Assembly (NCBI RefSeq): GCF_003704095.1
Contig: NW_020847187.1
Span: 310,001-374,000 of the forward strand
Reading direction: 5' to 3'
Source of the DNA: Pocillopora damicornis
Lineage: Eukaryota
Length of the DNA: 64,000 nt
A model generated the notes under the pieces. It made no database searches. It saw only the letters and a program-made list of their open reading frames with translations, and had not been told where the DNA came from. Shown here piece by piece: positions 1 through 46,726 of this stretch. The translations under genes were made by a program, and so were the position numbers. Every line of letters begins with the position of its first letter. Position 1 is the stretch's first letter.

Positions 1-2564
1 AATATGACATGATTAGTAGGAATGTATGCAGATGTAAAGCTTTGTGAGAGTTTCCGAAAAGTCAGATCACTGTTTCACTTAGACAGGAAACTTTTAAAAT
101 CTATGAAGCCTAACAATAGGTAAATAGAATTTAAAAGATAACCTATCTTTTTCATTGTTTTGTTCAGTTTTTGCATTATGTATTCTGAGGCTGATCACTA
201 TGGCTACACACCAATAAAACAGTAAAGACTCTGAATTTCTTCAATTTCTTCAATTGCAATACATTTGACCCTTACACTTTCAGGGTAAAATTGACCTCAA
301 TATCAATATTGTCACTTTTTTCAAATTTTCAACAAAAAGTTGAACTTTTCCTGCTAAGAGTCTGAGTACTTTAAGCACAAGACAGGTGCACTACACAAGC
401 TACTAAAGGCTTGTTTCAACCCAAACAGTGATTGTTTTGATGAGGAGATTACAGCATAAGATTAGGAGCTGCTTTCAAGCATACTCCTTGGTCCTGGTAT
501 TAATTTATTGCTTCCTATGTAAATCAAGAAAAGATGATTCTACAGCAATTTACCATGTCATAACAAAGAAACCCTCACAACCGATGAAATTGTAACTTTA
601 CCGCAAAATTAATTCCTTGGTGTATAATATACACAGAAGCTGTAAGAAAGGGCAATTTACATGATGAAATATTTAAATCACGACAGAATGCTTGTATGCT
701 CGTGAGCGACTGATTAAATTTCTTTTAGAAACGGAAAAAAACGTCTTTCGTGAGATGAAACAAACAGACTTGCCTTCTAGTATAAGGCATGCGCATAAAT
801 GCTATTCTGAAAAAGGATGTTAATAAAATAGTGAACTTCATATCGTAATCTTTGTCTTTTGTGCGCTACTTGTTATTTAGCAATCTGAAAAAAAACAAAA
901 TCCTTGACTCCAAAATGTTTACACTCCAACAGGGAACTAAAGCTTATTTCTATCCTGCATATCTTTACGAAAAGTTGCCTCGTTTCTTTCGCACGTTTCC
1001 CTTAAGACCTCGTCTTTATTTTGGTGCGTAGGCGATCTCTGTATTCAAAGCCTAGTTAGCTTATATTTAACATGTTTCAACCATTATATGTAAATATCGT
1101 TCTGTAAGCAAACCGCTACCAAATAATTCGAGTTTGATAAAAATTCTCGCATGGAGCTTCCGAATGGCGAGACTACAAGTATCAAGGCATTAATAGAAAT
1201 ATACAAAACTAAACAGCGGTTTGTTCGCCATAAAAGCACTTGCCGAAGCAATAAACAATCTTGTGTCGGTACAAATCGATCGATCTAAAATAAGCGGCTA
1301 GCCAGAGCCCGGAAATATTCAGTTAACAGGTTGTTTCGTCAGATCAGCTTTTAAAAGAAAAACGAACATCGCTTTTATCCAAAATCTCAAGCTTGACATT
1401 CTGATAAAACACGACCCGAACTGAACAACCTTCTTCTGAACGATATCTGGTAAAGCTGGGTATAGCTTTACAAAAATAAAAATCAAACCAGCAATCATTG
1501 CTACTTTAATCCGGGCCCAAAATGCTGTAAACTTCAGATCACGGAGAAAGAGATAAATTGAACAGAAGCGTGCTAGGCTCGTGGACGCCCAAACATCAAC
1601 TGGATCTGTGACCATGTCAATATCAGAGAATGCTCGCTACTCGAAAAGTCATGAAGCACAATTAAGATAAATAAGTATCCTTTTCAGCGCGTTTTTACAT
1701 GTTAGAATTAAAGTAAACGTAACTTCAAAAATAAATCGGCCTTAAATGTTCGATCACGGTATAGCGTATATGAAAAAAAAAAAAAGGAAAGAAAGACTCC
1801 TGTTCGATGTTGCAATTTGCCAAATATTAAAACTCAACCAAGCGTGATTCGATCGACATTGTGTATCTTAAGCTCTCGCCGAATGCGGTTTGTTGTCGAT
1901 TTGAAGTGTACAATAAAAACAACAAAGAAAAGATCACAGGAAATGCACAAGAAGTTCATGAAAAGAAGCGCAATCGAGGCTGAGGAAAATTCATGCAATC
2001 AAACGGGTATTATGTGTGCTTGAGCCGAACGACGAAATTAAATTCACGATCGGCCACTTTAACCGAAGGTGTCACTTTTCAAGAACCAAAGAACTACCGA
2101 TAGCCTACACGCACAAACGGTCTATAATTCAAAGCCGACCATCTGAGATCTAACATCCAGCGAACCTCCAGCAACAACGATCGAAAGGAAGATAGATCGT
2201 ATTGCTGACTGAGACAATCACCCCTTCTGTGAGGCGTAATTTTCTTCATATTAGTGTCAGAAGTTCAGGCGCACATTGAAAATTCGTTTTTTCCAGCTAT
2301 CTTGCGTTGGCGTTCCGCGATGGTTTTCAATGACCGCAAATATTGACAACAGGCGGCGGAAAAAAAGTAGCAATCGTCTACAGCCGCACGTATTTTGCGA
2401 TAAAAGGGTTACCAATAACTTTTCGATGACTTTAAAGATCAGTAAAGCTACGAGCGCGCACAATAATCGACACGCTTACTGACAGAGAAATATTCTAAGC
2501 CATCGATCGAGTCCCCGCATATAATAAGGAAACATAAGCACAACAGAATAGAAATCGTCCTTGC

Positions 2565-2842
2565 CTGGAACTTTTGTTGTGTCTCTTAGGTGGCTGAGAG
2601 GCATCGGTGACCGTTTTGTAGCCTTGTGGCTCAGCTGAAATTCCTTGGCGTTGATTTCTAGTACGAGTTGCTACGGCCGGTTGCAGAACCGAACGATATT
2701 TGTCTAACTCGCTCTCGAGTCGACGGATCAACTCATTTCTCCTTTTCAATTCCTGCTCCAAGGCCAAGATGCGGCTGTCCTTCATTTTCATTTCGGTGTT
2801 CTTCTCTTGGAGGGCCTGCTGCAGCTCTCGCAGACTGCCCAT
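2565..2842 (-). CDS. PRKG1: cGMP-dependent protein kinase I, beta-like alternative first coding exon (leucine zipper + pseudosubstrate); rest of gene lies off the left edge
   Basis: ATG at 2842 in context AAAATGG. Peptide MGSLRELQQALQEK...LESELDKYRSVLQP...RQGISAEP...HNKSSR closely resembles the PKG-Ibeta N-terminus (MGTLRDLQYALQEK...LQNELDKYRSVIRP...RQAISAEP). Similarity ends at a phase-2 AG|GCAAGG site, a putative GC donor at 2564. Confidence 0.88.
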
Positions 2843-5800
2843 TTTCGCTGTGGTTGCCGCAGTACCCCGCCGAAAACACAAACACCCTGCCTTCTTTTTA
2901 CTCTCAGCTCGACCGCAATGCATCACTCCGCGCGCTTTATCTAATCGCCAATGGAATACTGGGAATTCATTCACCGATATCCTGAGGGTAGTTGAAAAGA
3001 GACACTCGCAAAATTTGTGAAATGAAATTAAAGTTCACCGGGTAAAGCGCGAATCTAACGAAGAAATCGCAACGCCACCTCTTCCTCCTTATAAATGCGC
3101 ACTTCGGTTCCGTAAATCATGCGTAAGAGCTTTATCAGGGACGTGGTTATAAAGTAATTTGTATGTTAATAGATGATTGACGTTTGGAACGGATGTTCTG
3201 GCCTAATCATCGAGGCAAACCTGCGCACGTTGACTGTTTTGAGCCGAAGCTGCCACTCAGGACAAAACTGACTGAAATGTTAAAGTCTTAATGTGCCAAT
3301 AAAAGAAAGATAAAACTGATTGCTCCAAGTAAATTTCAACTGCATTTATTGTTTGTTTACACTAAGCAGTGCGGACGGGTTCGAGGCGGAGTGATCGCTT
3401 TAGTCCAGTCAGCTTCCACTCACTTCATAAACCGAAATTAGACAACATAACCGTCAAATACCATTTACAGCGCTTATCTCATTTACACTTAACTTGAAGA
3501 ATATTTTAATCCAGACAAATTTTGTGCGTTTTGAGGACTTGACCTTTAATCACACTCTGAACTAAAATCCCACGAAGATATTCTGCTGGTGACAGGTCTC
3601 ACAAACTTTGCGACGCCAGTAGATATGAAGGATATCAAGCAGCGGGCACTATTTTCAGACATCACGGAAAAAAAATCATAAAGAACAATAACAAAGAAAA
3701 GGTAGGTAGAGAGCTGTCAGTTCAAACCAGCGGCGCCTTGTTTACCGCGCCGAGCACCAACAAAGGATAAAACAATAGTTTTATTGAAGAATAATCTCTT
3801 TAGTCCTTTTCTCTGTGCTTACGTACGATTTGGCCCCTTTTTTTTTTTACCTTTTTCGCAGTCTACCTTACAAAACTTAAAAGCAACCGGATGTAAACCT
3901 ATCACTCTTCAAGTCACTTGCCCCGTAGAAAAAAGGTCATCAAGAGGTGATTCTTTTACTTAAATTATGATCGAATTGTCTTTCTTTTTGTTCATAAAAC
4001 ACACTCATTGGAGTGTTTTCGACACAAAATCTTAAAGCATTAAGACTGTTTACATTTCCTGTTGGAGTCCCTTTATTTTATTGGTTAAATTTGCATATCA
4101 GGACCACAAAAGGGTAGAAAAGTGACAGTGCTAGGCTACAAAGAGTTGAAATTACCGCATCATAAGTGGAAGTTGTAACTGCTAATTAACATTCTATTAA
4201 ATGAATACGACTTTATTCTCGCCAGCAATTTAATTCTTCGTCTGAGATCTGATAACTAAATTTTCCAGAACGACGACGCAATTTTGAGACTGAAATCAAC
4301 TACATAAAATGGTTTGACAGAATTGTCCATAAAAAAACAACAACAACAACAACAACAAAAATATAAATATGGTAAAGATTTTGAACGATGATTCGTTCAA
4401 ATATTCATAGCGTGCCGTTCGGCTCAACTTGAATTGAACTTATCAACAATTTTATCACTAAAGGTATTTTCCAACTTAATAAGATAAAAGCAGTAATGAT
4501 TTGATACCACCTGCCTAACACAGTTTATATGAGTTCGAACCAAGCCGTTTTGTTATTTCTTTCTGGTGACAACTTCAGCGCCGGGTATTCGGCACCGGTA
4601 TTCGTTAAATTGCACAAAAATTCTGTCACATTTGCATTTAGTTGAACGAGGAATGACTGAGGAACAAAGAATTGTCGGCTTTGTTAAAGCATTCACCATC
4701 TTTCGGATATTATAGGTTGGGTTAATGCGGAAAAATGTTAAACACTGCGAGGAGGACAGAGCTGTTGAGTGAATGAACTTTCCGTGTTATACAGCTGTGG
4801 CCAGTCAGAATTGATAACGAACCGTGTGGGGTTCAACATCTACTTTTGATATTAAACAAAAATGTATATTTTTTTCTTTTTTTACAACTTTTTTTAGAGA
4901 GCTAACAAAGATCCTTCTTCGAGGCTTGGAAGTAAATACTCCATCAGAGAAAAATCATCATAAGACGACGGACGACGTGACGGATCATCATAAACAAGGG
5001 GCAAGATGTTTCCCCACCCCTCACCCCTCTAAACCCCTTTTTAAAAAACCCCGATTAGCCATTAGTATTGATGTCGACTATTGATTTTCACTTATGCAGT
5101 CAAAATGCGTGGTATGCCATAAGCCTTAAAATATCTAAATGACAATTGTATTTCTTCTTCATCTGGTATTTATCATCACTTGTTGATAATATAAGTTTGG
5201 TCTGTTTGGGCAATGCCGTGAGTGTGAACGAGTAAGGAGGTGGAATTTGAAGCTGGCATGATTTCATCGAGGGTATATTTGGTACTACAAGCTAATTACT
5301 CCAGCCAGGGAAGGCCGCACAATTCTGGCACTGAAATCTGTTTCTTCACCTTAGAGCATCGGGAAATTGATAAAAAAGCGTAAAATAGGTGGCCCAAAAA
5401 TATTCTGATTGAAAATACATTAATAAAATGAATCGAGCAGAATCTTCTGTCAAAAAGCTATTCAACCTCGCGTTCTGCCTTTTAACGCGCGACATTGGAT
5501 TATCAAAACTGTTCCATTTACATTTACATAAATAAATATTTTGCAGACAATAAACGTAAGCAAGTGCTAGGAAGAGGGAAAAAGTTGACGCGATCTTTTT
5601 ACCCCTGAGGCGTACACTAGATTTATCCTTTATCATCCAGTCTTTTTTTTTTAACATAAAAAAAGAGTAACTAAGTACCTACACGTAAATATCAAATTAT
5701 CATTGAAAAAGCCCCCAGATAGAAAAGACAAAAAGTTAAAATCTTTCTTCACCCAAACAGTACTGTAAATTATTGGCGATAATCTTTGGCTTGAGAAGAT

Positions 5801-8441
5801 TGCGCGCGTAGGAAACAGGAACGTGTAAAGACAATCGCGGAAGGTCGCGTGTCTCATTCCTCGCTTCCAGTAGTAAAAACAGCGCTACCTGCACCTGCCT
5901 AAGGCTAAAAATATCCATTCACGTACAACACAAATTCGCCAAGATGCAGAAAGAAGGAAAAATTTGTTCTTAAAACCACCAGAACGTTGTGGTAACGCCT
6001 CTGCCTATTGTTAAGGTATGTTATCCACACGTTTCAAGCAAGTTTTCGGGTGAAAATGTTGACTTGGTATAATTTTTTCTTCCTTCCTGTAAATACCTGG
6101 TGTAAAGTGGGCTTTAGGTGACAATAATCCTGCCACAAGTATTTAAGCTGTATATTCCGAGCTACCTCGTTTTAAATCGAGGGATTATGAAATTGGTAAA
6201 ACAATATCAAATCAATCAAATAGCACTTCTCCTTACACGCACTTACAACATAATTCCTTCCGAAAACATTGGAACACTGATAATTTTCCATTAGACGAAA
6301 AAGTCAAAATACGTTCTATTGTCAAGTATAGGAGATAAACTTAATGATAACACCATTCATGAAAATATTTAAAATTTCCGTGCTTAATATTTTGAGCAGG
6401 GAATTTTAAGATGTTAACTTATCCAACAAATATGAAATGCCTCCATCCACGAACGTGCCTTGGTCATTGTGGACAAGATCACCTGTATACTTGCGTAACC
6501 AAGGTCCTTTACAGGAAATCACCGTTAACCAGGGTTACTCGTTAGAAAAACCCATTTTTACCTCACTCACAAATTTCCCCCCAAAAAAGTGGGTAATTAA
6601 ACCACAGAAAGGCATATGAGGATATGTTAGAGATCCGTTCAAAATGTTCTAGCGATCGCAATATTCCGACCCTTGGTCTTTTAAATAGGACTTTGCCTAA
6701 GTGTTCATGAAAGTTCAAGACATGGATGATATTTCTCATGAAAACAGCCTTTATTACGCGGAGTAATACGAGCATCGCTTGTCATCTCCTAAATTATTGC
6801 CTTTGAGCTATTTGAGGGTGGATCGGTGGAGTGGAGAGCTGAGTTGGAGTGTAGCACGTACGAGAGAACATTAACCAAACGCCTACGTGCACGAACTTGA
6901 CCTTCTCAGAGTCAATGCACGATTTATAACTTAGCATCATTTGTATTCCAGCTTTTAACTACCATTAACAATACCTACCGGCAGTTCCACTCGGATTACA
7001 CTCTGTCGGTAGACCATCAGCAAATCTTGAGGCGAAGTTTAAAATATTGATAATGGTCAAATTTGAGAATTTGCATATTTCTGTAATATCTTATCAAACT
7101 TTCGCCCAGAAGGCAGCATTTTGGGGTTTTCAGAACACTCATAAACAAGGTTGTGATTCTTCACTGATAAATTTGTTTTCTGTAGGCATCATGGAAAAAT
7201 TCTGCTTCTTCGAAAATTCTTCTTCTTTCAGGATTTTAATATTTGCCAGAATAGCCAAAAGGGTTACATGTGATAGAATAACCGCAGAGTTACTATGAAT
7301 AAGACGTGACTGAGTGCAAGAAGGGGACTTCATTCGGCCTAAACGCTACAGTTCATCAGTGTGCATGTAGGTCAAGATTATCTAATTGGAAATGTGATTG
7401 GAAGTTCATGCAGTATGCAGTTAATAGCCCAGTATCCTTTTCCTCTTTCTCTCGTTGATGGACGCCCCTTTGGAAAACTTTCTGATAACAGCGTTTAGAA
7501 GACAATTATTTCTTGTACCTATAAAACTTGAGGTGAGGTTACAATGTCCTTTACATATGGTGATCATGAAAAATCCTCCCTTTATTCCATCCGGCTCAAA
7601 GGAATTTTTGTCTTCTTTTTCTTTATTGCGTTCACACTTTCTGATTTTCAAATGAGCCTGCTAAAAATTAATCGAGGGAATTTCAAGGGAAGCGTCCTGT
7701 TTTGTATGACTGTTTTTTTTGTTTGTTTGTTTGTTTGTTTAGTTATGCCTTCTTTTTCATTTTACGTGAGACACTTGCTTCCACGTCGTCGAGGTAAAGT
7801 AGGGTAAAGTATAAAACATATAACATATTTTTATGTAGCTAGAGGAAACCCACAGGGCGAACCAGTCAACATGGCTGGTTTTAATGATGCGAACGAAGCG
7901 TTAAGTTGATTCAACTCTTTCAAGTCTATCATTGCTATTATTACCATTGTATTTTTTTTTCAAAATTATATGAGAAATTAATAAAAGTTGCTTTTTGTTT
8001 CGAATATGCGGTATTCCTTTGCAATCACGATGTAGTCCCTTCTTTTGTTACCAGACTCCACTCGAAATTGTTTACGCGCCAGTAACTAACTGTCTCGTTA
8101 CTGTCCAACTAAAACAAATCAACGCAAACCGCTGGGCTGAAAGAGTGACTTGTTCAATACAAACAAGACCAATGATACTTTTTTCTCTTTTTACTCATTT
8201 AGCGTAGATTATAGTAACGATGCTCAAATAGTGGCAGGAATACCATAATTTGACGCCTGTCCCTAATTAAACACAAAAAACCTGATTTCAAGGCCCTGCA
8301 AAGCCCTCTAAGGGCTTGGTTTTAACAATTTCAGCGAGCTCCTGGGAACGGTTAATACGCCTCCCTTGATATACATTCGCACGTATTACAAAAAAAAGGA
8401 GGGGTAAAGAAAGTAATAACATCATATTCCGTCTTACATAC

Positions 8442-8877
8442 CTTGGCTTTTTGGGGCAGTGTTTAAGCTGCTTTTGACTGTTGTTGTTCAGGTTCTTTGG
8501 TTCAGCGGATACTCCCTGCGCGCGCGCGCGAGGTAGAGACGGAGGCGGCATAACGGACATGAGCTTTTCAACTTTGCTGTCCAGTCTCTCAATCTCGCTC
8601 TGGTGCTCTCGTATTGTCATCTCTTTAGACATGACGTCCATACGCAATATTCTAATTTCCTTGTGTAAAATTTCGACTTCCTGTTTCTCCATGTCCTCTC
8701 GTTCATTGATCAAGTTTTCGTACTCCTTGATGACATCATCTTTCCTTCTAAGTTCGTTCCGTAAGAACTCGATCTCCTTCTTTTGTATCTCGAGCTGTTT
8801 GTTCCGCTCCCTCAGCGCACTTTCTAACAGCTTGAAGGAACTTTTCAGCCATTCCAGGTTCAAGGCTGCTGCTCGTC
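8442..8877 (-). CDS. PRKG1: PKG alternative N-terminal exon (alpha-like, long coiled coil + RAQGVSAEP pseudosubstrate)
   Basis: Acceptor aacaacag|GA at 8878/8877. Heptad-rich E/K/R/L/I coiled coil followed by KLMSVMPPPSLPRARAQGVSAEP (cf. PKG-Ialpha KCQSVLPVP...RTTRAQGISAEP). Phase-2 donor AG|GTATGT at 8441, the same phase as the 2565 exon. Confidence 0.82.
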
Positions 8878-9872
8878 CTGTTGTTTTAGGTTTGGTTCAG
8901 TGAAAAATGAAACAAAATAAACAAAATATACAAAATATGAAAAATGGTTGAAACAGATAAATAAATGAAAGAATATAAAGTGAGCTAAACTAAGGTAAAT
9001 AACTCAGCGTCTAAATATAGAAGAGATGTTTTATTCATTTCTCCACACAGTACCCGTAGCTTGATTAGAGTTATTTTTATAGATCAAGGTGCTTAATGTT
9101 TTTTCACTAGTGACGTAAATTTGCCTACCTCTCAAAAAATGCTTGGGAAAAGAAAAGCTTGTATCTATATAAAATGACCTTTTGAAAGGCCAGTAGAGAA
9201 ATATACGGTCACCAGTCAGGAGAATTTACTATCAGATCTTATATATCAGATATAGTCGAGTATCCTGATCGTGCCCATGCCCCTCTCGCTCCTCATATGT
9301 TTCTAGTTCTTATCGATGCCCGAAACCACACGGCCTAAGGCCTTGTTACGGGCGTTTTCAATAATCGTTCCAAAAAATTAATATGCCTTGAACATCAAAT
9401 CTGATAATTAGGACTCCATGAATCACTAATTTTCTTACCAAACTTTCCGCACATTTGTTCTTTCTTTATAAGAGCGTCAACATGCATTTTGCTGTACGGA
9501 ATCAAGATTCTACCCATTTTTCAATGACGTTTCATGACAACAGCCACTCATCCATTCGTTATCATCTTAAATGTATTGATGGCTTTTTCGGTGAAAAATT
9601 CAAATTACATGTAATTAATTTTCGCAGGTGTAACTTTAAAAATATATATCTCACTATAATTTTTTGGGCGAACCTTCACTTGTTTCATGATAAATGAAAA
9701 ACTTATTTTCGCGTCAGTTCATAAGGTTTCCATGCAAATGGTAAATCTCATTTTGCTTTATTACTTTTAGTGCACAATATCACCTCACCACAAGAACCAA
9801 TATCACTGGCATGACGCTACATTTGTGCGTCGACATGATCTGGTCTGTTCAGTTTGCTAACGATATACTTAC

Positions 9873-10029
9873 GTTCTCCTTCTCTGTCTCTCTCCTGCTT
9901 GGGATTATTCATTGGCGGTGTCTTAGGCCGAGGCGTGTTGTTGTTTGAGTCGCTCCTGAAGAAAGGGGAATTATTTCTAGAATTCCTTGCAACCAGCTTG
10001 AACGCTGGCGAACCAATGTGATCCTGCAT
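9873..10029 (-). CDS. PRKG1: Probable first coding exon of the alpha-like PKG isoform
   Basis: ATG at 10029, preceded by an in-frame TAG and an acceptor ttatttcag| at 10042. Encodes MQDHIGSPAF...QERDREGE and ends in the consensus donor C|GTAAGT at 9872 (phase 1). C+GA gives CGA, joining in frame to the 8877 exon. Confidence 0.68.
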
Positions 10030-10633
10030 CTATGATTCGGTCTGAAATAACAAATGAGTGAGTAAGTACGACAGCGTCATTCGGCGGAACTAAATTAACT
10101 CACCTGGTGGTCGCTTCACAATTCAACCAATAGGACTGTGGACTTTTTCATTTCCTTTAATCAGAGGTTTAACAGAGTATGACAGTTAACATCTTAAACG
10201 TACTGAGAACGCATTATTGGTAGCCTGGTTGTCGAAACGGTAATGATGTGGAAAATGTTTCCCGCATTTGATTGATATTTCTGTCGTGAACTAGGGTCAC
10301 AGGTGCGTTTATAACGAAACTCATCGCTTCGATTGTTATGATGAAACAAGCACACCTCTTTCATCTGCTGCTTTTCTTTTCAAATTAAAAATTTCAGACG
10401 GTGAACGAGACAGTTCATTGAAAAGATGACTATTGGAAGTAATGCGTTTAAAACTTGATAGGCACTAGACGGTCGTGTGACGATTTGCACGACTCAACTT
10501 GCTTCCAATATAACACCTCCCTCAGACCGCCATTAAAACAGATACACACATACACACACGAGTGGACGGATAGATGAACAACAAATCAATAGGAATAAAG
10601 ACATAAAGTAATTCAGTAATCGATATACAGCTA

Positions 10634-10870
10634 CAGTCGAGCCTCTAGTAAACGACCTTCCAAAATATCGACTTTTGGTGGTCGCTTACGGGAGGTTAAA
10701 AGCAATTGATAATCATCTCTGAAAGTGGTCGCTTTTGAGAGGTAGTCGCTTTCGACGGGTTCCAGCGATAGCGATTTGGCTTGAAAACTTTTGGTATTTT
10801 TGAAAAGTGGTCGCTTATGATAGGTGGTAGCTTTTAATACGAGAGGGGGTGGCAAGGGGAGGTTCGACTG
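10634..10870. mobile_element. MITE, Tc1/mariner(pogo)-type
   Basis: TIRs CAGTCGAGCCTC ... GAGGTTCGACTG flanked by TA on both sides. Internal repeats of gtggtcgctt. Confidence 0.8.
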
Positions 10871-13800
10871 TAGTAGTAAAAACTAAAATGAATCAGTTTT
10901 GATCTATGAATAGGATAAGAAAGTGACAAAGTGATCTTTGAAGGTTACGCGGAGTGCCATTGTGCCTGACAATTACGCTTAAGGCTCGCGATGTTTGTCA
11001 AATACATTGACCATTGAGGGACAACGGTTTGCATGAGTAAATTAATGCTTCATTTCCGGACTTCTATTTATAGAGTTTTGTCAATACCAATTAGCAATAA
11101 ACAAAAAACTTTTAACGTTAATTGAAAAAGATGTTTTCCTAAAGAGTCCCAAAAGCGAAGTCTCACGAAAAGATTGTAAAGCTGTCGTTGCAGTATTTGG
11201 TATTGAAAACTTTTTCACTTACGGGAACTCCATTCTGGGACATTGTGACAAACTGATATACAGGAGAGGTCTCAGGCGCAAGTGAATGAATGAACCGTAC
11301 TGGGATCAATTATTTAGAACTGAAACGCTCTTTCCAAGAGCAATGGAAAAGAGGAAAATGTTAAAAAAACAACCGTTAGCGTGGAAGCAGGGTAAGGTAT
11401 GTTACCCTCTCATTGAATTCTACAACAGTGTCCCACCAAATCTGGCGCAGAAGCCCAAACTGCTCTCCGAACATTTTGTAACTAAGATCATTTTATAAAT
11501 TAATTATGCCCTAATCCTCTCTTTTAAGCAATCAAACAAAAATACATACATTGGAGACAAGGTAAAAAGTCCTACTTGAAATATCCGTGATTGCAGGGAA
11601 GACAGCGGACAGAGCGTCAGAGGTCCTTGAGAAATGAAAAGTATCGGATGTGCCTTATTGGCGCATGAACTTGAAAAGCGGGTCAAGTACGTTTGATATT
11701 CGCCCGCAAAAAAGGAATAATAAAGTTGTCAGCATTCGTGCCAAGTTAAATCTCTCATGTCACGAACTGACTGCAATTTTTTTTTGACACTGTTTCTCGA
11801 ACTCAAAAGAAAAGAGGAAACGACAAATTCATGAATGTTTCCTCGATATCAGATCTCCTAAATAGACTTATTTAGGGTCTATGCAAAAAGCAAATAAATA
11901 CAAGAATTGGAAATTCTTATCTCAAGACTTGCTACATGTGAGCAACGATTGTATGACATAGCAATAATACCGGGCAATCGCCAGCTTGGGAGCCGGGGTC
12001 GTTCAGATTTTCAATGAAAGGAGTCGATTATTACCCCAATTGTCTTGAAAGGTATTTCTGCTCTTACAAAACAGATTTCAAAGTTGACAGTGTTATTTTG
12101 TGTACCATGACTGTCACGGTTTGCGCATCTCACAATAATGTAGCTCAAACTTTGCAAGGTCGTCGTCGTCCGATACTGACCCGTTTTTTTTTCCTCGATC
12201 CTTCACCATCTATGTTCTATTTTGGTTCCATAATTCCATTTTGCATTTTGTCTTTTTCAGTTTCCTGGAAAAAAATTTCGTAGCCTCCGTCAAGTTGTCA
12301 GGCGACTTCCGCAGCGGTAATATGGCTCAAGATGTGGTGAGTGCTTTTAGCAGCCACTTTTATTAAGTTCAATTACGTTGTATCTGTCGAGAACCCGCCT
12401 AAGTATTTGTAGAACTGACAAAGTGCTTTTAGAATAACAAATGTGGTGCTTGAAAGCCCACCTGGTGACCTCATTTATTCCTCCCATGTCAACTCGATTT
12501 GCACGTGATATTCATAGAGGCGCCTTCTAAGAACTATGAAAAGACTAACCAACAAAACGAGGAAGTAACGATGTTCTAGTACCATGACTTTAAGCCTTAG
12601 AGGCCCTTCTTGACAGATTTTTCTCAAAAGACTTACGAGAGGTATGTAAATTAATCCTGGTTTGCAACGTAACCTACGCACTGTGGTTGTAAATCGATGC
12701 CGTAGCATTTTGCGAAAATAACATTCTACACACGCGTGATCACGACAGATGCATTCTCACAAAATTCTTTCTGAGTTAATTTAATTATCTTCCTTAGCCT
12801 TCAGTTAAACCTATTACGGAAGTATGTCTCGTTAACATGACATCTTTGCATAACGCCATTACTCCAGATGATTGAGTTTCGTGTTGACCCCCTGATCGCT
12901 AATCATAAAATCATGCAAAATCTTTTCATGCATTTGGAAGAAACATAGCATGGTGCGGGGTCCACTTTTTGAATATCTTGTCTTCTTTCTTGTAAGGAAA
13001 ATGATACCAGAGAGCGATGAAGTATCGTTGTGTAGAAAAGCATGAGAGGCTGATGAAAGCTAACATGTTTACAAAATTTTTGATGAGATTTTGACATTTA
13101 AAACTGATGAAAAGCTTGCATGGGCGTAGATTACACTTAGAAGGTAAATGCCTTTCCATAGACTTCTGGAAGGAACTCTTAATTTTACCCACTAAAGCAA
13201 CAATGAGGAAAGTACAAATCATCCGCGACCGGAGAAAAAACATGAATCAGTAGTTGCACTTTGCAATCGTTTCTGTTTCTTTTAAACCAAAACATAAAAC
13301 AAAAACAACTTAATAAAGGTATACATATGATGCATTTGACAAAAAATATTTTGGAGGCTCCGATCATTGGACTTTGATGAAATCGTTTCAAGCAAATAGG
13401 TTGCAATCGATTTGACACCAAATTGTTGCGTTGACTTACTCTCGCTAAGGGAGGATCCATATGGATCATCTGTGGAACTTGGATATTCCAACCAAGGGTC
13501 AGTATTTATGGAGAGCCTTAGTTTTTACGAATGTGACGCACTAATTTTCCGAAGACGTCCGAGTCCAACAGAAGGCGTCTGATTGAGATATTAGGTCGGA
13601 CCAAAGAGGTCAATGGGTGAAGTAGTAAAGATAACTACTGCTGACTGGATTAAAAGTATCTAAGTGGATTAACGGCGGAAAGAGAAGGTAGTTTATTAAC
13701 GGGCCTTATGTGGTAACAAGGTAACACATTAAAGAGATTTATGCGTTGTATGGAGATCACTGGATCGTACCAATTGGCTCGAGTTTTTCTTATCTATGAA

Positions 13801-40190: not shown

Positions 40191-41386
40191 GAGCCCAATG
40201 ACCACTGAGTACTATTGCGCAATTTTTTCCATTTTGCGGTGGAGGAAATTAAAAAAAAAGAAGACAAAAAAACAAAGGCATTTTATGACTTAGCTACCAC
40301 AGGTATCCCAGCAAAAAGTTATAAGGTGGAAATATAAAACGGTTTCCCATGTATCCCTATTAATCAAGAAAGTGAGGAAGAACGAGGGGGGAGTGGTGCT
40401 TGTTGGATATTATGGCAAAGGGGAAGAGCGCTTATAGGAGAGAGGGCCTTCATTCCAGGAAATAGGGTATCTGAGGAGTTAAATTTAATAGCTTGTTCTT
40501 CCCAGATGGATATAAAAAACAGCCTTAACAATTACAAAAGTTGCACAATCTGAAGAAACTCTTATTTTATTACTATGCGGTGCATGAATATACTTAGTTG
40601 AATAAAAAGAAGCAATAAAATGAAACTTAAAAAAATCAACATTGATTTTCATGTCTTTGCATAGTTTCACCAATTCTTGATATTATGCAATGATTGACTG
40701 TCTTCCTAAATATATCATAAATACATTAAGTTACAATATCATTATGGAATATTTTAGATAAGAATTATATAAAATTTCAACTTTAACTTTTCGTGTAATT
40801 TACTTTGAAAACTAACAATCCTTTCTAAGAAAACTGGGAGTGAAAATTGAACAAGACATCTGAGATCAGTCAAGAGTTTGTAACTATCTTGTTTAAAAAT
40901 TGTCAGTTACATGCCAGAATTTCATCATATTTGCTTGTTACCTATTGAAATCTTATACATATTAAAATTATCTTTTGCAAGTTCAGTACTTGTTCATGAA
41001 AGGGAAAAGTCAAATTCTCCTGTGTCCTGTTGTGATCATAACCACACCCATTTCACACTTAACTACACCTCAACTAAAATCTGCTGTTACCAATTAAAAG
41101 AGGATTTGACCTGTACATGTAACTATTTGAGTCTGAGAATCTTAGATTGCTTAGTCTCTTTAAGTCTATATTGCTTTCAGCAAAATTACTTGACACATAA
41201 AAGGGTGCAATATGTTTTTCAAAAGGGACACTGCAATGCTTCCATAAGATTGTCTCAAACCTTCAAGTAGCCTAAAAATCACAACACTGAAAATAAGAAG
41301 AAAAGCTGGAAACTGAGAACTTAAAAATAATTCTTAGCAACTAGGTCAGATTGTTATAATAACCTTAACTGCTTTGTTATTATTGT

Positions 41387-44300
41387 TCATGGCTTTTCTC
41401 CAGAGGCAAGGCGTCGGTTGATATCTTCAATAACTGGAGGCAGATCACTAATGGAATCAATTACGTAATGAGCACCAGCATTGGCCAGGATATCATAAGA
41501 ACGTTTCAGCTTCCTTTCAAGGTCATCATCATTCAGGCTGGCGATCTCTTCTTCATTCAAACCAACATAATTTCCCTGGTTAAAGAAAAACAACAGAGTT
41601 GTTAGAAGGTCCACCAGAAAAAAGTATATATAGTCCTTCAGAGTCTTAGATTGACATGCTGACTAGTAAAAATTTTGCCCATTAAATTTGCAGCAAGAGT
41701 TGGAAATTTAAGGGAACTGTTTCATACACCAATTTGCAACATTTCTATAACTTAGTACAATTACAATAAAACAATATTTATGTTTCATAGTCTTCAGAAA
41801 AAGAACCTTTCTTCTTTCACCTTAGTTTCCAGAGGTACAGAGCCTTGGAATTTTATGGGAATCTCCAAATACCACAGTGTAAAGTTGTGGTCAGTTGTTT
41901 AGCATGCTACGCAATATTGCACAAGTGTTTTATCCGGCAACCACAATTTAATTTCTGGTAACCATTTTATGATTTCAGGGCTGTGTTGTTCAAAGGGGGG
42001 TATGATAACTCAGGATTAGTGTGGGATCTGATTTTAGAGATGAAAGCCTTAAAAGTAAATTAATTTTAACTCTTGTTGTCCACAATTTAATTATTGGTTG
42101 CTGTACTTATCCCATTAAGACTTCGGAACAAAAAAAAAAACAACAACAACAACAAAACAACAAAAATTCACTCTGGGTTTGTGCTGATTTGGCTCTTAAC
42201 AACTGGGCATCTTTTTGCCAGTTACAGTAGTCTGATTGTCTTTGTAGGAGAATACCAAGTAAAGAAACAATGCATATATATTATATTGAACTATACTTCT
42301 TGCTAAGTAAGGGAAATTGTGTAAATGAGAGCTAATACCTTAATCAAGAAGCTTATTTATGCTTCTGAGTGAGTGTGTGTAAGTGAGAGAGAGAGAGAGA
42401 GAGANNNNNNNNNNGAGAGAGAGAGAGAGAGAAACTGGCTATTTTGTGATATCCTTGTCTATAATCATATCATAAACGAAACTTACTGTTTTAGCAAGTC
42501 CTACACTCCAGCAGCCTGCAGATGTACCTTCCCTGACTCCATCAGCTGTGTCATCAACTTTAACAAGGGCTTCGATGGGATTGACATCCAGTCTAATAGC
42601 ACTCAACCAAACCATGTAAGGGTAAGGTCGGGCTTGTGGTACCTCATCTGCTGCAACATAACAATCAGGAGTATAGCCCTGCTTAGTGGCAGCCACCTTC
42701 AGTACATCTATCATGGATTTAGTGAATCCGGTTGTGGACCCAATCTTCAGGTTCATGTTGTTACGCAGGTAATTAACAGTGTCAACTGCACCAGTTATCA
42801 TCTGAGAGTAGTCCAAAATACAGTCAAGTTGCAAAGGAACAAAGTTCTGAAACATTCTTTCCACATCATCCTCATTGGGAAAGCGACCAAACTTTTCAAA
42901 CCATCTCCTTCGTACAGACTCCATCTCTGTGACCTTACGGATGTGCACCCTTTTGTGCATTCCCATGGGCTCTCTTGCCTCTTCCATTGTGATTGGGACT
43001 CCCTCATTTTTAAAGACTTCATTGAACACAACAGCTGGTGAGTAGACGCCGCAATCCAAAACAGTGCCAGACCAGTCCAAGATCACAGCCTTAATCTTTC
43101 CTTGGTATTGACGGACCATTCTATACTCGGAGCGAGGATTTTTCAACAGGGCACCTGAGGTAAAGTCAAAGTACATTTCAGGAATAGAAAGAATAATTTT
43201 GTAATGCGCTCCCTTTCTTCAAGTACTTTGTACAACAACATTTTCAATACAACCAAACATTTCATGTGAAGATAACTATATGAAGTAATTCAGGTCTACA
43301 TGAACTCTTTCAATTTCCTCAAAGTTAGTTTCACACTTTCAGACATACTGTGTCTTCATTTCATTACCCCTTTTTCATTCTCAAGAATGACAAACATCTT
43401 AATTTTCCTCACAATATCCCCCCTGAATCACACATCAAGGTCACAAAAACCAAGGAAATGATTGCCAACTGAAGAAGCTCTCTAAGCACCTTAGGAAAAT
43501 TACACAAAAAAGTATGGAGAATACGCAAACTGATCAAAGGTTGTCGAGAGTTAAAAAAAAAAAAAACCTTCAAACAAAACCATTAAAATAAAACCAGGTA
43601 TAAAAACGTAATTTTTGCACTAATCTTGATTTGAAGACTCATAAAATTTCTCAAAAAAAAAGTTAACTGGAGCAAACCTTCTGCAGTAATTAATGATGCT
43701 TGAAATCTCTGGGTGGTCTTTGAAATATTTTGCTACCAATATCACACAACAAAGAACCAGGCATTTTACGTGCGGAGAAATATCATGAAGACAATAGAAG
43801 TTTTTCTTAACTAAAAACCACAGTGGCTAAGATCTCAACTATTCATTTCCTGATGAGTAACTGTAACATTAAACACTGAGTAAAGTGAATGAAAATCTGT
43901 CATGGAACCTCTTTTCTAGTTGAATCTCTTAAGTCTTCACAGCAGAAACACTCATGGTGGCAAAGTGAATTTTTGAGGAACAATATCATTGAATAATAAT
44001 TTAAGCTTGAAGACTAGTGTATGAATAAAGTTGTTTTGTGTAGAAGCTTGTGTTTCATCAACAGAAAGAGATCAAGGCATTTAAAACAGCAGGCATTGTT
44101 CTATAATAAAAGCTTTCCCGTGAAAGAAAGCTAATTCATTGTGTGGCTGCAATGTATTCCACAAGGAAAAAAAATAATGCATTGATACCCTGATATCATC
44201 ATTGTGCATCCTCCCATAGCAACTCTGTTCAATATATTAAAGTTCATTCAAAACAACAATTTCTAACAAATATTTTTCTTCAGTTTAACAATCAGAAAAA

Positions 44301-45391
44301 AAGCTCAAAAACCAGCTAAATAGTTGCATTTTTGGCAATAAATTGACTCATTTTTGCACCGTATTACCTCTCCACTAGGAAATACTTCAGTATAACCCCA
44401 TACTGATCAAAAACAAAGCTGTAGACTCTAAGCACATCTATTGCTCTTGAAAAGGTCTTATTTTCATCCAAGAACTGCATGCATAATAAAGAAATAGACT
44501 ATGTGGAAATCTTGTCCTCCCCTGCCTTTATTTTCACGAGGAAGTGTGATTACTTGTTTCATAATGTACAGGACAAAGCTAGCCAATGTTGATCAGCTGA
44601 GACAGATGTATGTGAAAACGATCTTTATATGAGATAAGAGACCTAAAAAACTACACTGCACTATTTCTGAAAGTATACGATCATTGCCACCCACAAACTT
44701 CCCAATGTTATCGACAGGAAATACGTAACAGGAAATATGTAACACCGAGAAAAAAAGCTCACAGAACACGGCACACAGCAAAATCAGCATTCAAAACCGG
44801 TTTAACTAGTTCTGCCTGAAAATGGACAATGTTTTTCTCTAGGCCACTGTTCTTTTCTCAGCGTCGAATAAACGTTAGAAGCGTCAGATAAAATGTAATC
44901 AAATTTGAAAAAAAAGGTTTTTTGGTTACATTAATGATCTTGTTTTCTTCCATTAACAGATGCAAAGTGCATATTAAAGGACTTGGTAAAAGATACGTCT
45001 GAGATGACGATCAGTTTGAAAGGACCAAATCGCGACTCAAGCGCCATCGCTTGATACGTGACAGAAAATCTTTTGCTGTTATCAACTGATATGTCAATTG
45101 GCTAACGCAAGGAGCTCTCGAGTGTTCGCCCTTCGTCAGAACGAAGAAAAACGTTACAGAAGAACCCAATCGAATTAACACCAAGCTTAAGACTGAAATA
45201 CAAGTATAGAAAAACTGAAAGTTTTCCTCACCGTTGACCAGTTTCAAATCATGTTCACTTGTGTTCACAGTGGCGCTTGGTGCTTGGGCTTTCGCTTGAT
45301 GTGCACCACGAACCAAGATGTCGGTCGAATTAACGAGAGGACGAATAATGCGGGAAGAAGAAAAGCAAACCTTTCGCATGGTGGACAGCAT
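41387..45391 (-). CDS. phnX: Phosphonoacetaldehyde hydrolase (phosphonatase, HAD superfamily), 3 exons, 338 aa, with N-terminal presequence
   Basis: Exons 45391-45232 (G|GTGAGG), 43154-42487 (cag|GT ... ACA|GTAAGT) and 41575-41387 (cag|GGA ... TGA) total 1017 nt in frame. Motifs: AVILDWSGT (nucleophile Asp80), [12 protein letters not shown] (Schiff-base Lys121, 41 residues after the Asp as in Bacillus D12/K53), [38 protein letters not shown]-terminal RLASGEKP. Confidence 0.93.
41979..42208. mobile_element. Diverged Harbinger-like MITE in phnX intron 2
   Basis: Ends ggctgtgttgttcaaag ... aacaactgggc. The body is similar in reverse orientation to 23262-23499. Confidence 0.55.
42385..42432. repeat. 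(GA)n microsatellite interrupted by an N gap
   Basis: Directly visible. Confidence 0.9.
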
Positions 45392-46726
45392 TCTTTCTCG
45401 AGGTGTAGACCGGTTTATAAAAAATCGTGTGGAATAATCCAGTAACGTGCTTTGACCACCGCGTGTTAACTCAAGTTTTTGCCGCCGGCAAAGTAAAAGA
45501 CTGACTAACCGGACGTCAACAATGGCCTGTTTACCGCCTTGTCATGTGATGTCCGCGTGTTATTGACTTGATGCGTTATGCTGTCACGCTTGTTTACAAA
45601 AAACGACCCCCCCTGCTTAGGAGGTCAATTTCCACAAAACAATATAAATAATAATGAGCTTCACGAATGTTAATGGGGGTATGTTTATTCTTACCTGAAA
45701 TTAATTTTCAGATCATGGCTTATCACGAGGTCTTATATCAATTTCAGTCAAGTAATTCTTTACCTTTTTTTTTTTTTTTTTTTAAGAATTCCAGGTTGAC
45801 CTTGCATGACTTCCATCCATTTCATTGTCTTGAGGGAACAATTGCTCGGGCGGTTTGCATCAGTTGATTTAAACGCTTTTGTTTTATTCATGAAAGGAGA
45901 CTGCCTTTCGTGTCATGATATCATGAGGAATATTACACGCAAACGGTGGAAACGTTGGATAAATGCTCCTTAGTAAATGCGATCACGGCTAAGGTCGGTA
46001 GGATTTTCGTATTTTCAGTGGATAAAGTTGCGTGAAAGCCCACACATGTAGAAATCAATGGAGGAATAATAGACGCTATTGAATTAAACAATAGCAAAAT
46101 AATCAACGTTCTTTCTCTGGGTTGTCAAATTTCCACAATTATCACGTCACTCCAGGGAATTGTCTCCATGAGATTTGTGTTCCCTTAAGTAATGGCCAGA
46201 ACCTTTACGAGGTGGATGAAAGCCACGGAGACCATTCTTCATATGTCATTTTCAGTTGAATTTGTGTAGAACCCCTCTGACGCGGAATTTAAAGTCTTTC
46301 GTTAATAATTACGACGGAGCTTGCGTGACATGTAACAAAACACGAATCCTTTCCCTCGCAGCTTGATGTTTCTCCGGAAATTCGTGTCCAGTTTCCAGCA
46401 ACCAGCTACTTGGAGTTTGAACTCTAATCCACATGTGATCTTGTCGCATGATTTGGATGGGAGAGAATGTCTTGACACTATTAAAATGTCAACGTCAAAA
46501 GCTTCTCAGAGTTGAATGTTTGAAGTAAATACACTACTGGTGCGGAGAAATCGATTCGATTAACATCTATTTCTATGCTTCTATATAGAACTAAGGTTTC
46601 AAAATGATTTTATATTGGAAGCGGAATATTGCCACCTGGTTTAATCGAAAGAGCTGCTTCGTTACTCACTGTCTCTCCGGTAATATTTGGGACAAAAGGA
46701 ACGCAGGTTTCTGACAACTAGATCGT

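What the first reader, a model, noticed from the sequence alone, without database searches (positions are those of the whole stretch)
41387..45391. Animal-encoded, spliced phosphonatase (PhnX): host C-P bond catabolism
Seen: a 3-exon gene with canonical GT-AG introns, lying among animal genes and repeats, so it is not a bacterial contaminant. It keeps the phosphonatase catalytic set: DWSGT nucleophile lacking the second Asp of ordinary HAD phosphatases, MGxxKxxH Schiff-base cap loop with exact D-to-K spacing, RPYP and VKVDDT. Established: PhnX cleaves phosphonoacetaldehyde to acetaldehyde + Pi in the bacterial PhnW/PhnX 2-aminoethylphosphonate (AEP) pathway, and cnidarians are rich in AEP phosphonolipids. 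Inference: the animal can itself recycle phosphorus from phosphonates, an activity usually credited to microbes and relevant in P-poor water. Homologues may already be annotated in invertebrates, but the pathway is poorly characterised there.
Basis: partly seen in the sequence, partly recalled or inferred. Interest (0 to 1): 0.9.

Follow-up and report, generated by a model that had tools for sequence, protein, structure and literature searches.

The report
Coral-encoded spliced phosphonatase (PhnX) gene
A stony-coral genome carries a real, spliced and expressed gene for phosphonoacetaldehyde hydrolase, the enzyme that breaks the carbon-phosphorus bond of the common marine phosphonate AEP, but such genes are already annotated in many invertebrates and already reported for corals.

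Summary
A three-exon minus-strand gene encodes a 338-aa protein: exon 1 at 45391-45232, exon 2 at 43154-42487, exon 3 at 41575-41387. Both introns are GT..AG. The N gap (42405-42414) lies in intron 2 inside a (GA)n run and does not touch the coding sequence.

- **Expression:** RNA contigs from four runs in four studies show both splice joints exactly, and one contig spans all three exons.
- **Family:** exon 2 alone scores 259.5 bits on TIGR01422 (cut-off 220). The equivalents of Asp12, Lys53, His56, Thr126, Arg160 and Asp186 of the solved Bacillus cereus enzyme are present.
- **Pathway:** the same genome also holds spliced genes for PhnW, PEP mutase and phosphonopyruvate decarboxylase.

It is not new. 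Orthologues named "phosphonoacetaldehyde hydrolase(-like)" exist in corals, anemones, jellyfish, Hydra, sponges, hemichordates, amphioxus, echinoderms, crustaceans and horseshoe crabs. A 2016 eLife paper and a 2026 preprint already list coral PhnX, the latter with PhnW, expression and the same phosphorus-recycling inference.

Both introns sit at positions and phases shared with Hydra, an anemone and a hemichordate. The last intron is also shared with a sponge, amphioxus and a crab. That favours one intron-bearing animal gene over a coral-specific transfer from dinoflagellates. The protein tree alone cannot decide. Another note of this scan covers exon 1 of this same gene.

The parts
45232..45391 (-). 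Exon 1 (coding part). It starts at ATG 45391 and encodes 53 residues plus the first base of a Gly codon. This N-terminal extension is absent from bacterial PhnX. It is basic, rich in Ser/Thr and has one acidic residue in the first 30, which is the make-up of a mitochondrial presequence.
   Evidence: sequence, donor GTGAGG at 45231; RNA joint to exon 2; contigs continue 5' past 45500; composition, similar extensions in other cnidarians, sponges and protists; no family match. Targeting itself is inferred, not tested.
43155..45231 (-). Intron 1: 2077 nt, GT..AG, phase 1. It contains a dispersed genomic repeat at about 43383-43560.
   Evidence: skips 2077 in four runs; intron depth about 25 against about 786 for exons in X1; repeat with 1628 first-look candidates in the genome; same split Gly codon and phase in Hydra, Ptychodera and Actinia.
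42487..43154 (-). Exon 2: 668 nt, encoding the HAD core and cap domains. In full-length numbering it carries Asp80 (nucleophile, DWSGT), Lys121 and His124 (MGMHKRVH), Thr195, Arg229 (RPYP) and Asp254-Asp255 (VKVDDT).
   Evidence: translation; TIGR01422 259.5 bits, cut-off 220, profile 1-201; B. cereus PhnX structures, E 1.6e-52; active-site columns.
41576..42486 (-). Intron 2: 911 nt, GT..AG, phase 0. It holds the assembly gap 42405-42414 inside a (GA)n run.
   Evidence: sequence; skips 911 in all four runs; same position and phase in Hydra, Actinia, Dysidea, Branchiostoma, Ptychodera and Eriocheir; each has a 62-aa final exon.
41387..41575 (-). Exon 3 (coding part): 62 residues plus stop TGA at 41389-41387. 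This is the C-terminal part of the PhnX core domain. The 3' UTR continues below 41387.
   Evidence: translation; TIGR01422 profile 203-251, directly continuing the exon 2 match; RNA contigs run on to 41300 and beyond.

Best explanation
This is the coral's own nuclear gene for phosphonoacetaldehyde hydrolase (PhnX, EC 3.11.1.1).

Mechanism, inferred by orthology to the solved Bacillus cereus enzyme: Lys121 in the cap domain forms a Schiff base with phosphonoacetaldehyde, with help from His124. Asp80 in the core domain attacks phosphorus and the C-P bond breaks. Hydrolysis then releases acetaldehyde and phosphate.

The substrate would come from 2-aminoethylphosphonate (AEP) through the PhnW transaminase that the same genome encodes. 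AEP could be dietary, dissolved, or released by turnover of the animal's own phosphonolipids. The genome also encodes PEP mutase and phosphonopyruvate decarboxylase to make it.

Exon 1 adds a presequence-like extension, so the enzyme probably works in mitochondria. That would keep it away from the biosynthetic pool of the same aldehyde.

The gene belongs to a eukaryote-wide PhnX clade. Within animals it most likely descends from one intron-bearing ancestral gene rather than from a coral-specific transfer.

Shown here: the gene model, splicing, expression, family membership, the catalytic residues, the partner genes and the shared introns. Inferred: activity, substrate source, localisation and physiological role.
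For: - **Gene model and splicing:**. Four RNA runs from four studies show both joints, and one contig spans all three exons. Exon depth is 30-150 times intron depth.
- **Family:**. TIGR01422 scores 259.5 bits on exon 2 alone, above the 220 cut-off. Exon 3 continues the profile at 203-251. The next family scores only 61.6 bits.
- **Solved relatives:**. All top hits are B. cereus phosphonoacetaldehyde hydrolase structures, at E about 1e-52.
- **Catalytic residues:**, against the residues named in PMC11203657. The equivalents of Asp12, Thr16, Met49, Lys53, His56, Thr126, Arg160 and Asp186 are invariant in all 24 rows compared.
- **Nearest bacteria:**. The sister bacterial clade (about 60% identity, 276 aa) sits in a classical AEP locus: ABC transporter, LysR regulator, class V aminotransferase, PhnX, then TauD-like and HD proteins.
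- **Partner genes in this genome:**
  - PhnW in three exons summing to about 411 bits, cut-off 400.8.
  - PEP mutase at about 329 bits, cut-off 319.6.
  - Phosphonopyruvate decarboxylase at about 374 bits, cut-off 312.5.
- **Shared introns:**
- **Trees:** the eukaryote clade has 100/99 support. Animals form one clade in the best tree, but weakly at 61/36.
- **Presequence-like extension:**
Against: - No enzyme activity, localisation or phosphorus-dependent regulation was measured.
- The eukaryote clade differs from the B. cereus enzyme at three active-site positions: Cys22 is Val, Tyr128 is Phe in cnidarians, and the motif IV acids are shifted (Gly185Asp, Asp190Gly). The last change is shared with the operon-encoded bacterial relatives. 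Gly185Asp also occurs in active Achromobacter enzymes.
- PhnW is reversible, so it could serve AEP synthesis rather than breakdown.
- Having synthesis and breakdown in one organism raises a futile-cycle problem. Here that is solved only by an inferred compartmentation.
- The tree does not resolve animals, cnidarians and protists. The alternative grouping costs 0.97 lnL, p-AU 0.35.
- Eukaryote-to-eukaryote transfer of an intron-bearing gene would also preserve introns.
Confidence: 0.82

Rival explanations
1. The coral gene was acquired by horizontal transfer from dinoflagellates (Symbiodiniaceae), or from a microbe through them, into the coral ancestor. This is the published claim. On this view it is not inherited from the animal ancestor.
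For: The eLife 2016 table of transfer candidates lists an anthozoan phosphonoacetaldehyde hydrolase with source 'Dino'. The 2026 preprint reports corals grouping with Symbiodiniaceae apart from other Metazoa. In my FastTree run, the cnidarian plus Corticium clade sat next to a clade of protist and metatranscriptome sequences. The AU test does not reject that grouping, p 0.35.
Against: Both introns of the coral gene are at the same codon and phase as in a hemichordate. The last intron is also shared with a sponge, amphioxus and a crab. Orthologues occur in at least seven animal phyla, with identity falling off roughly as animal relatedness does. With a site-heterogeneous model, animals come out as one clade, though weakly.
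Confidence: 0.13
2. The enzyme is active PhnX, but its role is housekeeping rather than phosphorus scavenging from the environment. It would remove surplus or toxic phosphonoacetaldehyde, or recycle AEP from the animal's own ceramide-AEP lipids.
For: The same genome encodes the full AEP-synthesis route and PhnW. Expression is high in four unrelated polyA data sets with no stated phosphorus stress. Corals are described as rich in sphingophosphonolipids (PMC10301201, listed).
Against: Nothing here separates internal from external substrate. The two roles are not exclusive.
Confidence: 0.35
3. It is a generic HAD phosphatase, or a PhnX-like hydrolase with another substrate, that merely resembles phosphonatase.
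For: It differs from the B. cereus enzyme at Cys22, Tyr128 and Asp190. No assay has been done.
Against: The score is above the curated equivalog cut-off on one exon alone. The PhnX-like family TIGR03351 scores only 61.6 bits and phosphatase families under 35 bits. The Schiff-base Lys and His are present, and the +2 Asp of phosphatases is absent. The nearest bacterial relatives lie next to phnW.
Confidence: 0.04
4. The sequence is bacterial or symbiont contamination of the assembly.
For: The family is best known from bacteria.
Against: The gene has two spliceosomal introns confirmed in polyA RNA. GC is host-like. A host dispersed repeat lies in intron 1. The window sits more than 300 kb into its contig. 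Intron positions are shared with other animals.
Confidence: 0.01

Closest known systems
Bacillus cereus phosphonoacetaldehyde hydrolase (PhnX; PDB 1FEZ, 1RQL, 2IOF, 2IOH and others)
   Same: It has the same HAD core-plus-cap architecture by sequence, at E 1.6e-52 over residues 19-219 of exon 2. The Asp nucleophile, the Schiff-base Lys at the same 41-residue distance, His56, Met49, Thr126, Arg160 and Asp186 are all kept. There is no Asp at nucleophile +2.
   Different: Cys22 is Val, Tyr128 is Phe, Gly185 is Asp and Asp190 is Gly. The coral protein has a roughly 55-residue N-terminal extension encoded by its own exon. The gene is nuclear, spliced and not in an operon.
Bacterial 276-aa PhnX of phnW-phnX loci (P0101 and P0116 clade)
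   Same: These are 58-60% identical over exon 2 and form the sister group of the eukaryote clade. They share the DDT..G form of motif IV.
   Different: The bacterial genes lie in an operon with a transporter, a LysR regulator, PhnW and TauD/HD proteins. They keep Cys22 and Tyr128 and have no N-terminal extension.
Annotated animal 'phosphonoacetaldehyde hydrolase(-like)' genes, for example Porites lobata, Acropora muricata, Actinia tenebrosa, Hydra vulgaris, Corticium candelabrum, Ptychodera flava, Branchiostoma lanceolatum and Eriocheir sinensis
   Same: They are orthologues at 57-84% identity over exon 2. Cnidarians and sponges have the same length class (329-343 aa). Intron positions are shared, as is the 62-aa final exon.
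   Different: This is simply the copy of another scleractinian. Corals and Hydra have lost two introns that the sponge Dysidea and bilaterians keep. Position 14 is Ser here, in Porites and in Hydra, and Ala in most others.
TIGR03351 PhnX-like phosphonatase-like hydrolases
   Same: They belong to the same HAD subfamily. A paralogue of this kind exists in the same genome.
   Different: The window gene scores 61.6 bits there against 259.5 bits on TIGR01422, so it is not of this kind.

Membership tests
Phosphonoacetaldehyde hydrolase (PhnX, TIGR01422 equivalog) | Score above the curated whole-protein cut-off (220 bits) of the equivalog model | tested here: met
   exon 2 alone scores 259.5 bits over profile positions 1-201. 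Exon 3 adds 37.3 bits over 203-251. One search gives the same result on the genome.
Phosphonoacetaldehyde hydrolase (PhnX, TIGR01422 equivalog) | HAD motif I Asp nucleophile (Asp12) without the general-acid Asp at +2 (Ala14 in B. cereus) | tested here: met
   the motif is DWSGT, with Asp conserved and Ser at +2.
Phosphonoacetaldehyde hydrolase (PhnX, TIGR01422 equivalog) | Cap-domain Schiff-base Lys53, with His56 and Met49 | tested here: met
   MGMHKRVH, with Lys 41 residues after the nucleophile as in B. cereus. The residue roles are taken from PMC11203657.
Phosphonoacetaldehyde hydrolase (PhnX, TIGR01422 equivalog) | Motif II Thr126, motif III Arg160, motif IV Asp186 | tested here: met
   all three are conserved. 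The second motif IV acid is shifted (Gly185Asp, Asp190Gly), as in the operon-encoded bacterial sister clade.
Phosphonoacetaldehyde hydrolase (PhnX, TIGR01422 equivalog) | Remaining active-site residues Cys22 and Tyr128 of the B. cereus enzyme | tested here: not met
   these are Val and Phe here and across cnidarians. Bilaterians partly keep Tyr. They are not among the three residues named as directly catalytic. Achromobacter enzymes with Cys22Ser are active.
Phosphonoacetaldehyde hydrolase (PhnX, TIGR01422 equivalog) | Hydrolysis of phosphonoacetaldehyde to acetaldehyde and phosphate | not testable with these tools
   This needs a recombinant enzyme assay.
PhnW-PhnX pathway of AEP catabolism | An AEP:pyruvate transaminase (PhnW, TIGR02326) in the same organism | tested here: met
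   three colinear exons on contig C3501 cover profile positions 3-360. Their bits add to about 411 against the cut-off of 400.8, which is a rough sum. One search gives the translations.
PhnW-PhnX pathway of AEP catabolism | Co-regulation or operon linkage of phnW and phnX | tested here: not met
   The two genes lie on different contigs (C3822 and C3501), as expected for a eukaryote. Co-expression was not tested.
Horizontally acquired gene specific to corals | No orthologues in other animals, or placement away from other animals with support, and no shared gene structure | tested here: not met
   orthologues in at least seven phyla; shared introns; tree undecided; animals form one clade in the best tree.

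The most novel reading that the evidence does not exclude
PhnX is an ancestral animal enzyme, probably mitochondrial, kept in sponges, cnidarians, ambulacrarians, amphioxus and some arthropods, and lost in vertebrates and many others. Together with host-encoded PEP mutase, phosphonopyruvate decarboxylase and PhnW, it gives these animals a complete, compartmented cycle of AEP synthesis and breakdown of their own. On this reading, the published accounts of a dinoflagellate-to-coral transfer are tree artefacts.
Probability: 0.5. Interest if true: 0.45.

Novelty: already known. Interest (0 to 1): 0.3.

Why it matters
Breakdown of phosphonates in the sea is usually credited to microbes. A host-encoded PhnW/PhnX pair, beside host-encoded AEP synthesis, means that budgets of phosphorus cycling in coral holobionts should count the animal itself. 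The gene's existence and this inference are already in databases and in the coral-genomics literature, so the finding does not open a new question.

The modest new point is that gene structure argues against the published idea of a coral-specific transfer from Symbiodiniaceae. It points to an old animal gene with many losses instead. No animal PhnX appears to have been assayed in the papers I could search, so a simple enzyme test would still be worth doing.

Tried and rejected
- **Joined protein left out.** Every search used exon 2, exon 3 or exon 1 by reference, and the window row in the trees is exon 2 only.
- **Large tree unfinished.** The careful tree on 63 rows did not finish in three runs, and only its quick version was seen. 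I replaced it with a 39-row careful tree that leaves out the six long-branched 'mid' rows, ten long bacterial rows and some near-duplicate animals.
- **Naming the protist clade.** I fetched three transcript contigs. Codon GC3 of 0.51 and 0.78 does not identify them. Only Nonionella (a foraminifer) and Pterocystis (a centrohelid) are named. I therefore could not test the Symbiodiniaceae claim directly.
- **Look-ups with no record.** Exact-protein look-ups found nothing for Patiria, Corticium and Acropora.
- **Earlier notes.** A word search of the scan's notes for phosphonate terms found nothing.
- **Neighbouring ORFs.** The three longest ORFs between 29.9 and 36.2 kb have no Pfam match, so they add nothing about context.
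- **Antisense ORF.** The 222-aa plus-strand ORF at 42373-43041 runs across the N gap, antisense to exon 2. I take it for a shadow ORF.
- **PhnW N-terminus.** The first matched exon has no start codon in frame, so I could not say whether PhnW also carries a presequence.
Full report
**1. What is in the sequence**

The gene lies on the minus strand.

| Part | Coordinates | Boundaries |
|---|---|---|
| Exon 1 | 45391-45232 | ATG at 45391; ends one base into a Gly codon; donor GTGAGG |
| Exon 2 | 43154-42487 | follows acceptor CAG; ends after ...GLAKT; donor GTAAGT |
| Exon 3 | 41575-41387 | follows acceptor CAG; ends at TGA 41389-41387 |

The intron phases are 1 and 0. The three lengths (160, 668 and 189 nt) add to 338 codons plus stop.

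The assembly gap at 42405-42414 sits inside intron 2, in a (GA)n microsatellite, so it has no bearing on the frame. I did not fill it or look it up. Each exon was searched by reference, and the tree row for the window is exon 2 alone.

**2. Is it spliced and expressed?**

Contigs of four RNA runs from four different studies were laid on 41300-45500.

- All four runs show a joint that skips exactly 911 bases (41574/42486, CT..AC on the + strand).
- Three runs show a joint that skips exactly 2077 bases (43151/45229), and the fourth shows the same junction registered one base along. With the stated cut offsets, these are the two predicted introns.
- Record 14 of run X5 (1964 nt) holds exons 1, 2 and 3 in one molecule and runs on at both ends, so there are UTRs beyond the finding's coordinates.
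- Word depth is about 786 on exons against 5-25 on introns in X1, with similar ratios in the other runs.
- A bump of depth at about 43415-43555 in intron 1 comes from a dispersed repeat with more than 1,600 first-look candidates in this genome.

Composition is host-like throughout, at GC 35-41%. The window occupies positions 310,001-374,000 of its contig. Contamination is excluded.

**3. What is it?**

Exon 2 alone scores 259.5 bits on NCBIfam TIGR01422 (phosphonoacetaldehyde hydrolase, equivalog, cut-off 220) over profile positions 1-201. Exon 3 matches positions 203-251. The next family, PhnX-like TIGR03351, scores 61.6 bits, and phosphatase families score under 35. Pfam sees only the general HAD fold.

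Against solved structures, the six best hits are Bacillus cereus phosphonoacetaldehyde hydrolase entries at E about 1e-52. The alignment is ungapped from the nucleophile to the Schiff-base lysine.

PMC11203657 names Asp12, Lys53 and His56 as directly catalytic and lists Cys22, Thr126 and Gly185 among the active-site residues. In a 24-row alignment, the equivalents of Asp12, Thr16, Met49, Lys53, His56, Thr126, Arg160 and Asp186 are invariant.

The differences from the B. cereus enzyme are these:

- Cys22 is Val in the whole eukaryote clade.
- Tyr128 is Phe in cnidarians and some other animals.
- Gly185 is Asp and Asp190 is Gly.

The last pair is shared with the nearest bacterial relatives. One of those relatives (P0116) lies in a textbook AEP locus: ABC transporter, LysR regulator, class V aminotransferase, PhnX, TauD-like protein and HD protein. 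Gly185Asp also occurs in purified, active Achromobacter enzymes. I therefore file the gene as a PhnX member. Activity is untested.

**4. The pathway around it**

Six-frame searches of the window's own 234.35-Mb assembly found the following.

| Gene | Place | Profile covered | Summed bits (rough) | Cut-off |
|---|---|---|---|---|
| PhnW | three colinear exons on C3501 | 3-360 | about 411 | 400.8 |
| PEP mutase | C3436 | 22-270 | about 329 | 319.6 |
| Phosphonopyruvate decarboxylase | five exons on C4007 | 1-112 and 171-360 | about 374 | 312.5 |

The animal therefore encodes both synthesis and breakdown of AEP. Both routes pass through phosphonoacetaldehyde, so some separation is needed.

Exon 1 encodes about 55 residues that bacterial PhnX lacks. 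The first 30 residues hold five Arg or Lys and one acidic residue. Similar extensions occur in other cnidarians, sponges, Limulus and the protist relatives. That is the make-up of a mitochondrial presequence. I had no targeting predictor, so this is an inference. Another note of this scan on the same window makes the same suggestion.

**5. Is it known?**

Yes. A search with exon 2 returned proteins named phosphonoacetaldehyde hydrolase or phosphonoacetaldehyde hydrolase-like across many animal groups:

- **Cnidarians:** Porites lobata (81% identity), Acropora muricata, Rhopilema, Hydra and Paramuricea. Orthologues in Actinia and Exaiptasia carry an 'uncharacterized protein' name at NCBI.
- **Sponges:** Corticium and Dysidea.
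- **Hemichordates:** Ptychodera and Glandiceps. Saccoglossus also has an orthologue, named 'uncharacterized protein'.
- **Chordates:** amphioxus.
- **Echinoderms:** four species.
- **Arthropods:** several decapods and the horseshoe crab Tachypleus. The Limulus and Petrolisthes orthologues carry uncharacterized or hypothetical names at NCBI.

The eLife 2016 coral comparison lists an anthozoan phosphonoacetaldehyde hydrolase among transfer candidates, with source 'Dino' (PMC4878875). A 2026 preprint (doi 10.64898/2026.05.06.723128) reports the following:

- Both are expressed in ten species.
- It claims a transfer from a microbe through Symbiodiniaceae into the coral ancestor.

A 2023 review notes that phosphonates remain cryptic in eukaryotes (PMC10574752). 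I found no assay of an animal enzyme in the library I could search.

**6. Origin**

This is the one point where the session adds something. I mapped orthologous proteins back onto their own genomic loci.

- **Window intron 2** (phase 0, between ...AKT and GNY..., leaving a 62-residue last exon) is at the identical alignment column and phase in six other species. They are Hydra, the anemone Actinia, the sponge Dysidea, amphioxus, the hemichordate Ptychodera and the crab Eriocheir.
- **Window intron 1** (phase 1, inside the Gly codon just before [10 protein letters not shown]) is at the identical column and phase in Hydra and Ptychodera, and in the same split Gly codon in Actinia. Dysidea has a phase-1 intron three columns away in a gappy region. 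Amphioxus has a phase-0 intron two columns away.
- **Two further introns** are shared by Dysidea and the bilaterians and are absent from the coral and Hydra, which looks like loss.

Cnidarian and bilaterian genes therefore descend from one intron-bearing gene.

Trees give the same picture without settling it.

- The eukaryote sequences form a clade with 100/99 support, sister to the operon-borne bacterial group.
- Inside that clade, three groups form an unresolved trichotomy: cnidarians plus Corticium (91/90), bilaterians plus Dysidea (87/95), and a group of protist and metatranscriptome sequences (88/85).
- Animals are one clade in the best tree, with weak support at 61/36.
- Forcing cnidarians together with the protist group costs only 0.97 log-likelihood units, p-AU 0.35.
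- FastTree put the protist group next to cnidarians, while the site-heterogeneous model did not. This suggests the published grouping is sensitive to the model.

One caveat remains. A eukaryote-to-eukaryote transfer of genomic DNA would carry introns with it, and I had no protist genomic locus to compare. I therefore rate vertical descent in animals as likely, not shown.

**7. Organism**

The window groups with Porites and Acropora at 98/91 support, so it comes from a scleractinian. From memory, an assembly of 234.35 Mb in 4,393 pieces matches the published Pocillopora damicornis assembly. I could not check that here.

**8. Verdict**

The thing is an ordinary, already annotated and already discussed member of a known family. 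The remaining interest lies in the untested biochemistry of animal PhnX and in correcting the transfer story.

Noticed in passing
G000:C3714:2835-3434 (L002:1411-2154, minus strand): A second, intron-less 247-aa HAD open reading frame in the same genome. It scores best on PhnX-like TIGR03351 (148 bits, below the 218.9 cut-off) and 128 bits on TIGR01422. It keeps a DxAGT motif I, and a run of N lies next to it. It may be a paralogue of unknown substrate, or it may not be host DNA.
   Followed up: partly
G000:C3501:52642-54613 (+), G000:C3436:556846-558236 (+), G000:C4007:406331-411471 (-): These are spliced host genes for PhnW, PEP mutase and phosphonopyruvate decarboxylase. The coral therefore encodes both synthesis and breakdown of AEP. 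The first matched PhnW exon has no in-frame start, so an upstream exon is likely.
   Followed up: partly
window 43383-43560 (inside intron 1): A dispersed repeat with more than 1,600 first-look candidates in the genome, 70-86% identical among the copies listed. It explains a local bump of RNA depth and the short high-depth contigs with loose ends at 43411-43443.
   Followed up: yes
window 43155-45231 versus 41576-42486: Intron 1 is covered by RNA contigs at about 4-5 times the depth of intron 2 in several runs, and contigs span it whole (for example X1 record 4). This could reflect slower removal of intron 1, or DNA carry-over.
   Followed up: no
window 42373-43041 (+): A 222-aa antisense open frame overlaps exon 2 and runs through the N gap. 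I take it for a shadow of the coding strand, not a gene.
   Followed up: no
L026 (NCBI GCA_964411425.1 contig, 1-16831): The nearest bacterial PhnX lies in a full AEP locus that combines both hydrolytic (PhnW-PhnX) and oxidative (TauD-like plus HD, PhnY*/PhnZ-type) routes, beside a transporter and a LysR regulator.
   Followed up: no
P0067 (Nonionella stella), P0087 (Pterocystis sp.) and unnamed metatranscriptome proteins P0041-P0076: Close PhnX relatives (63-72% identity) with long presequence-like N-termini occur in a foraminifer, a centrohelid and many unnamed marine eukaryote transcripts. The eukaryote PhnX clade is therefore much wider than animals.
   Followed up: partly
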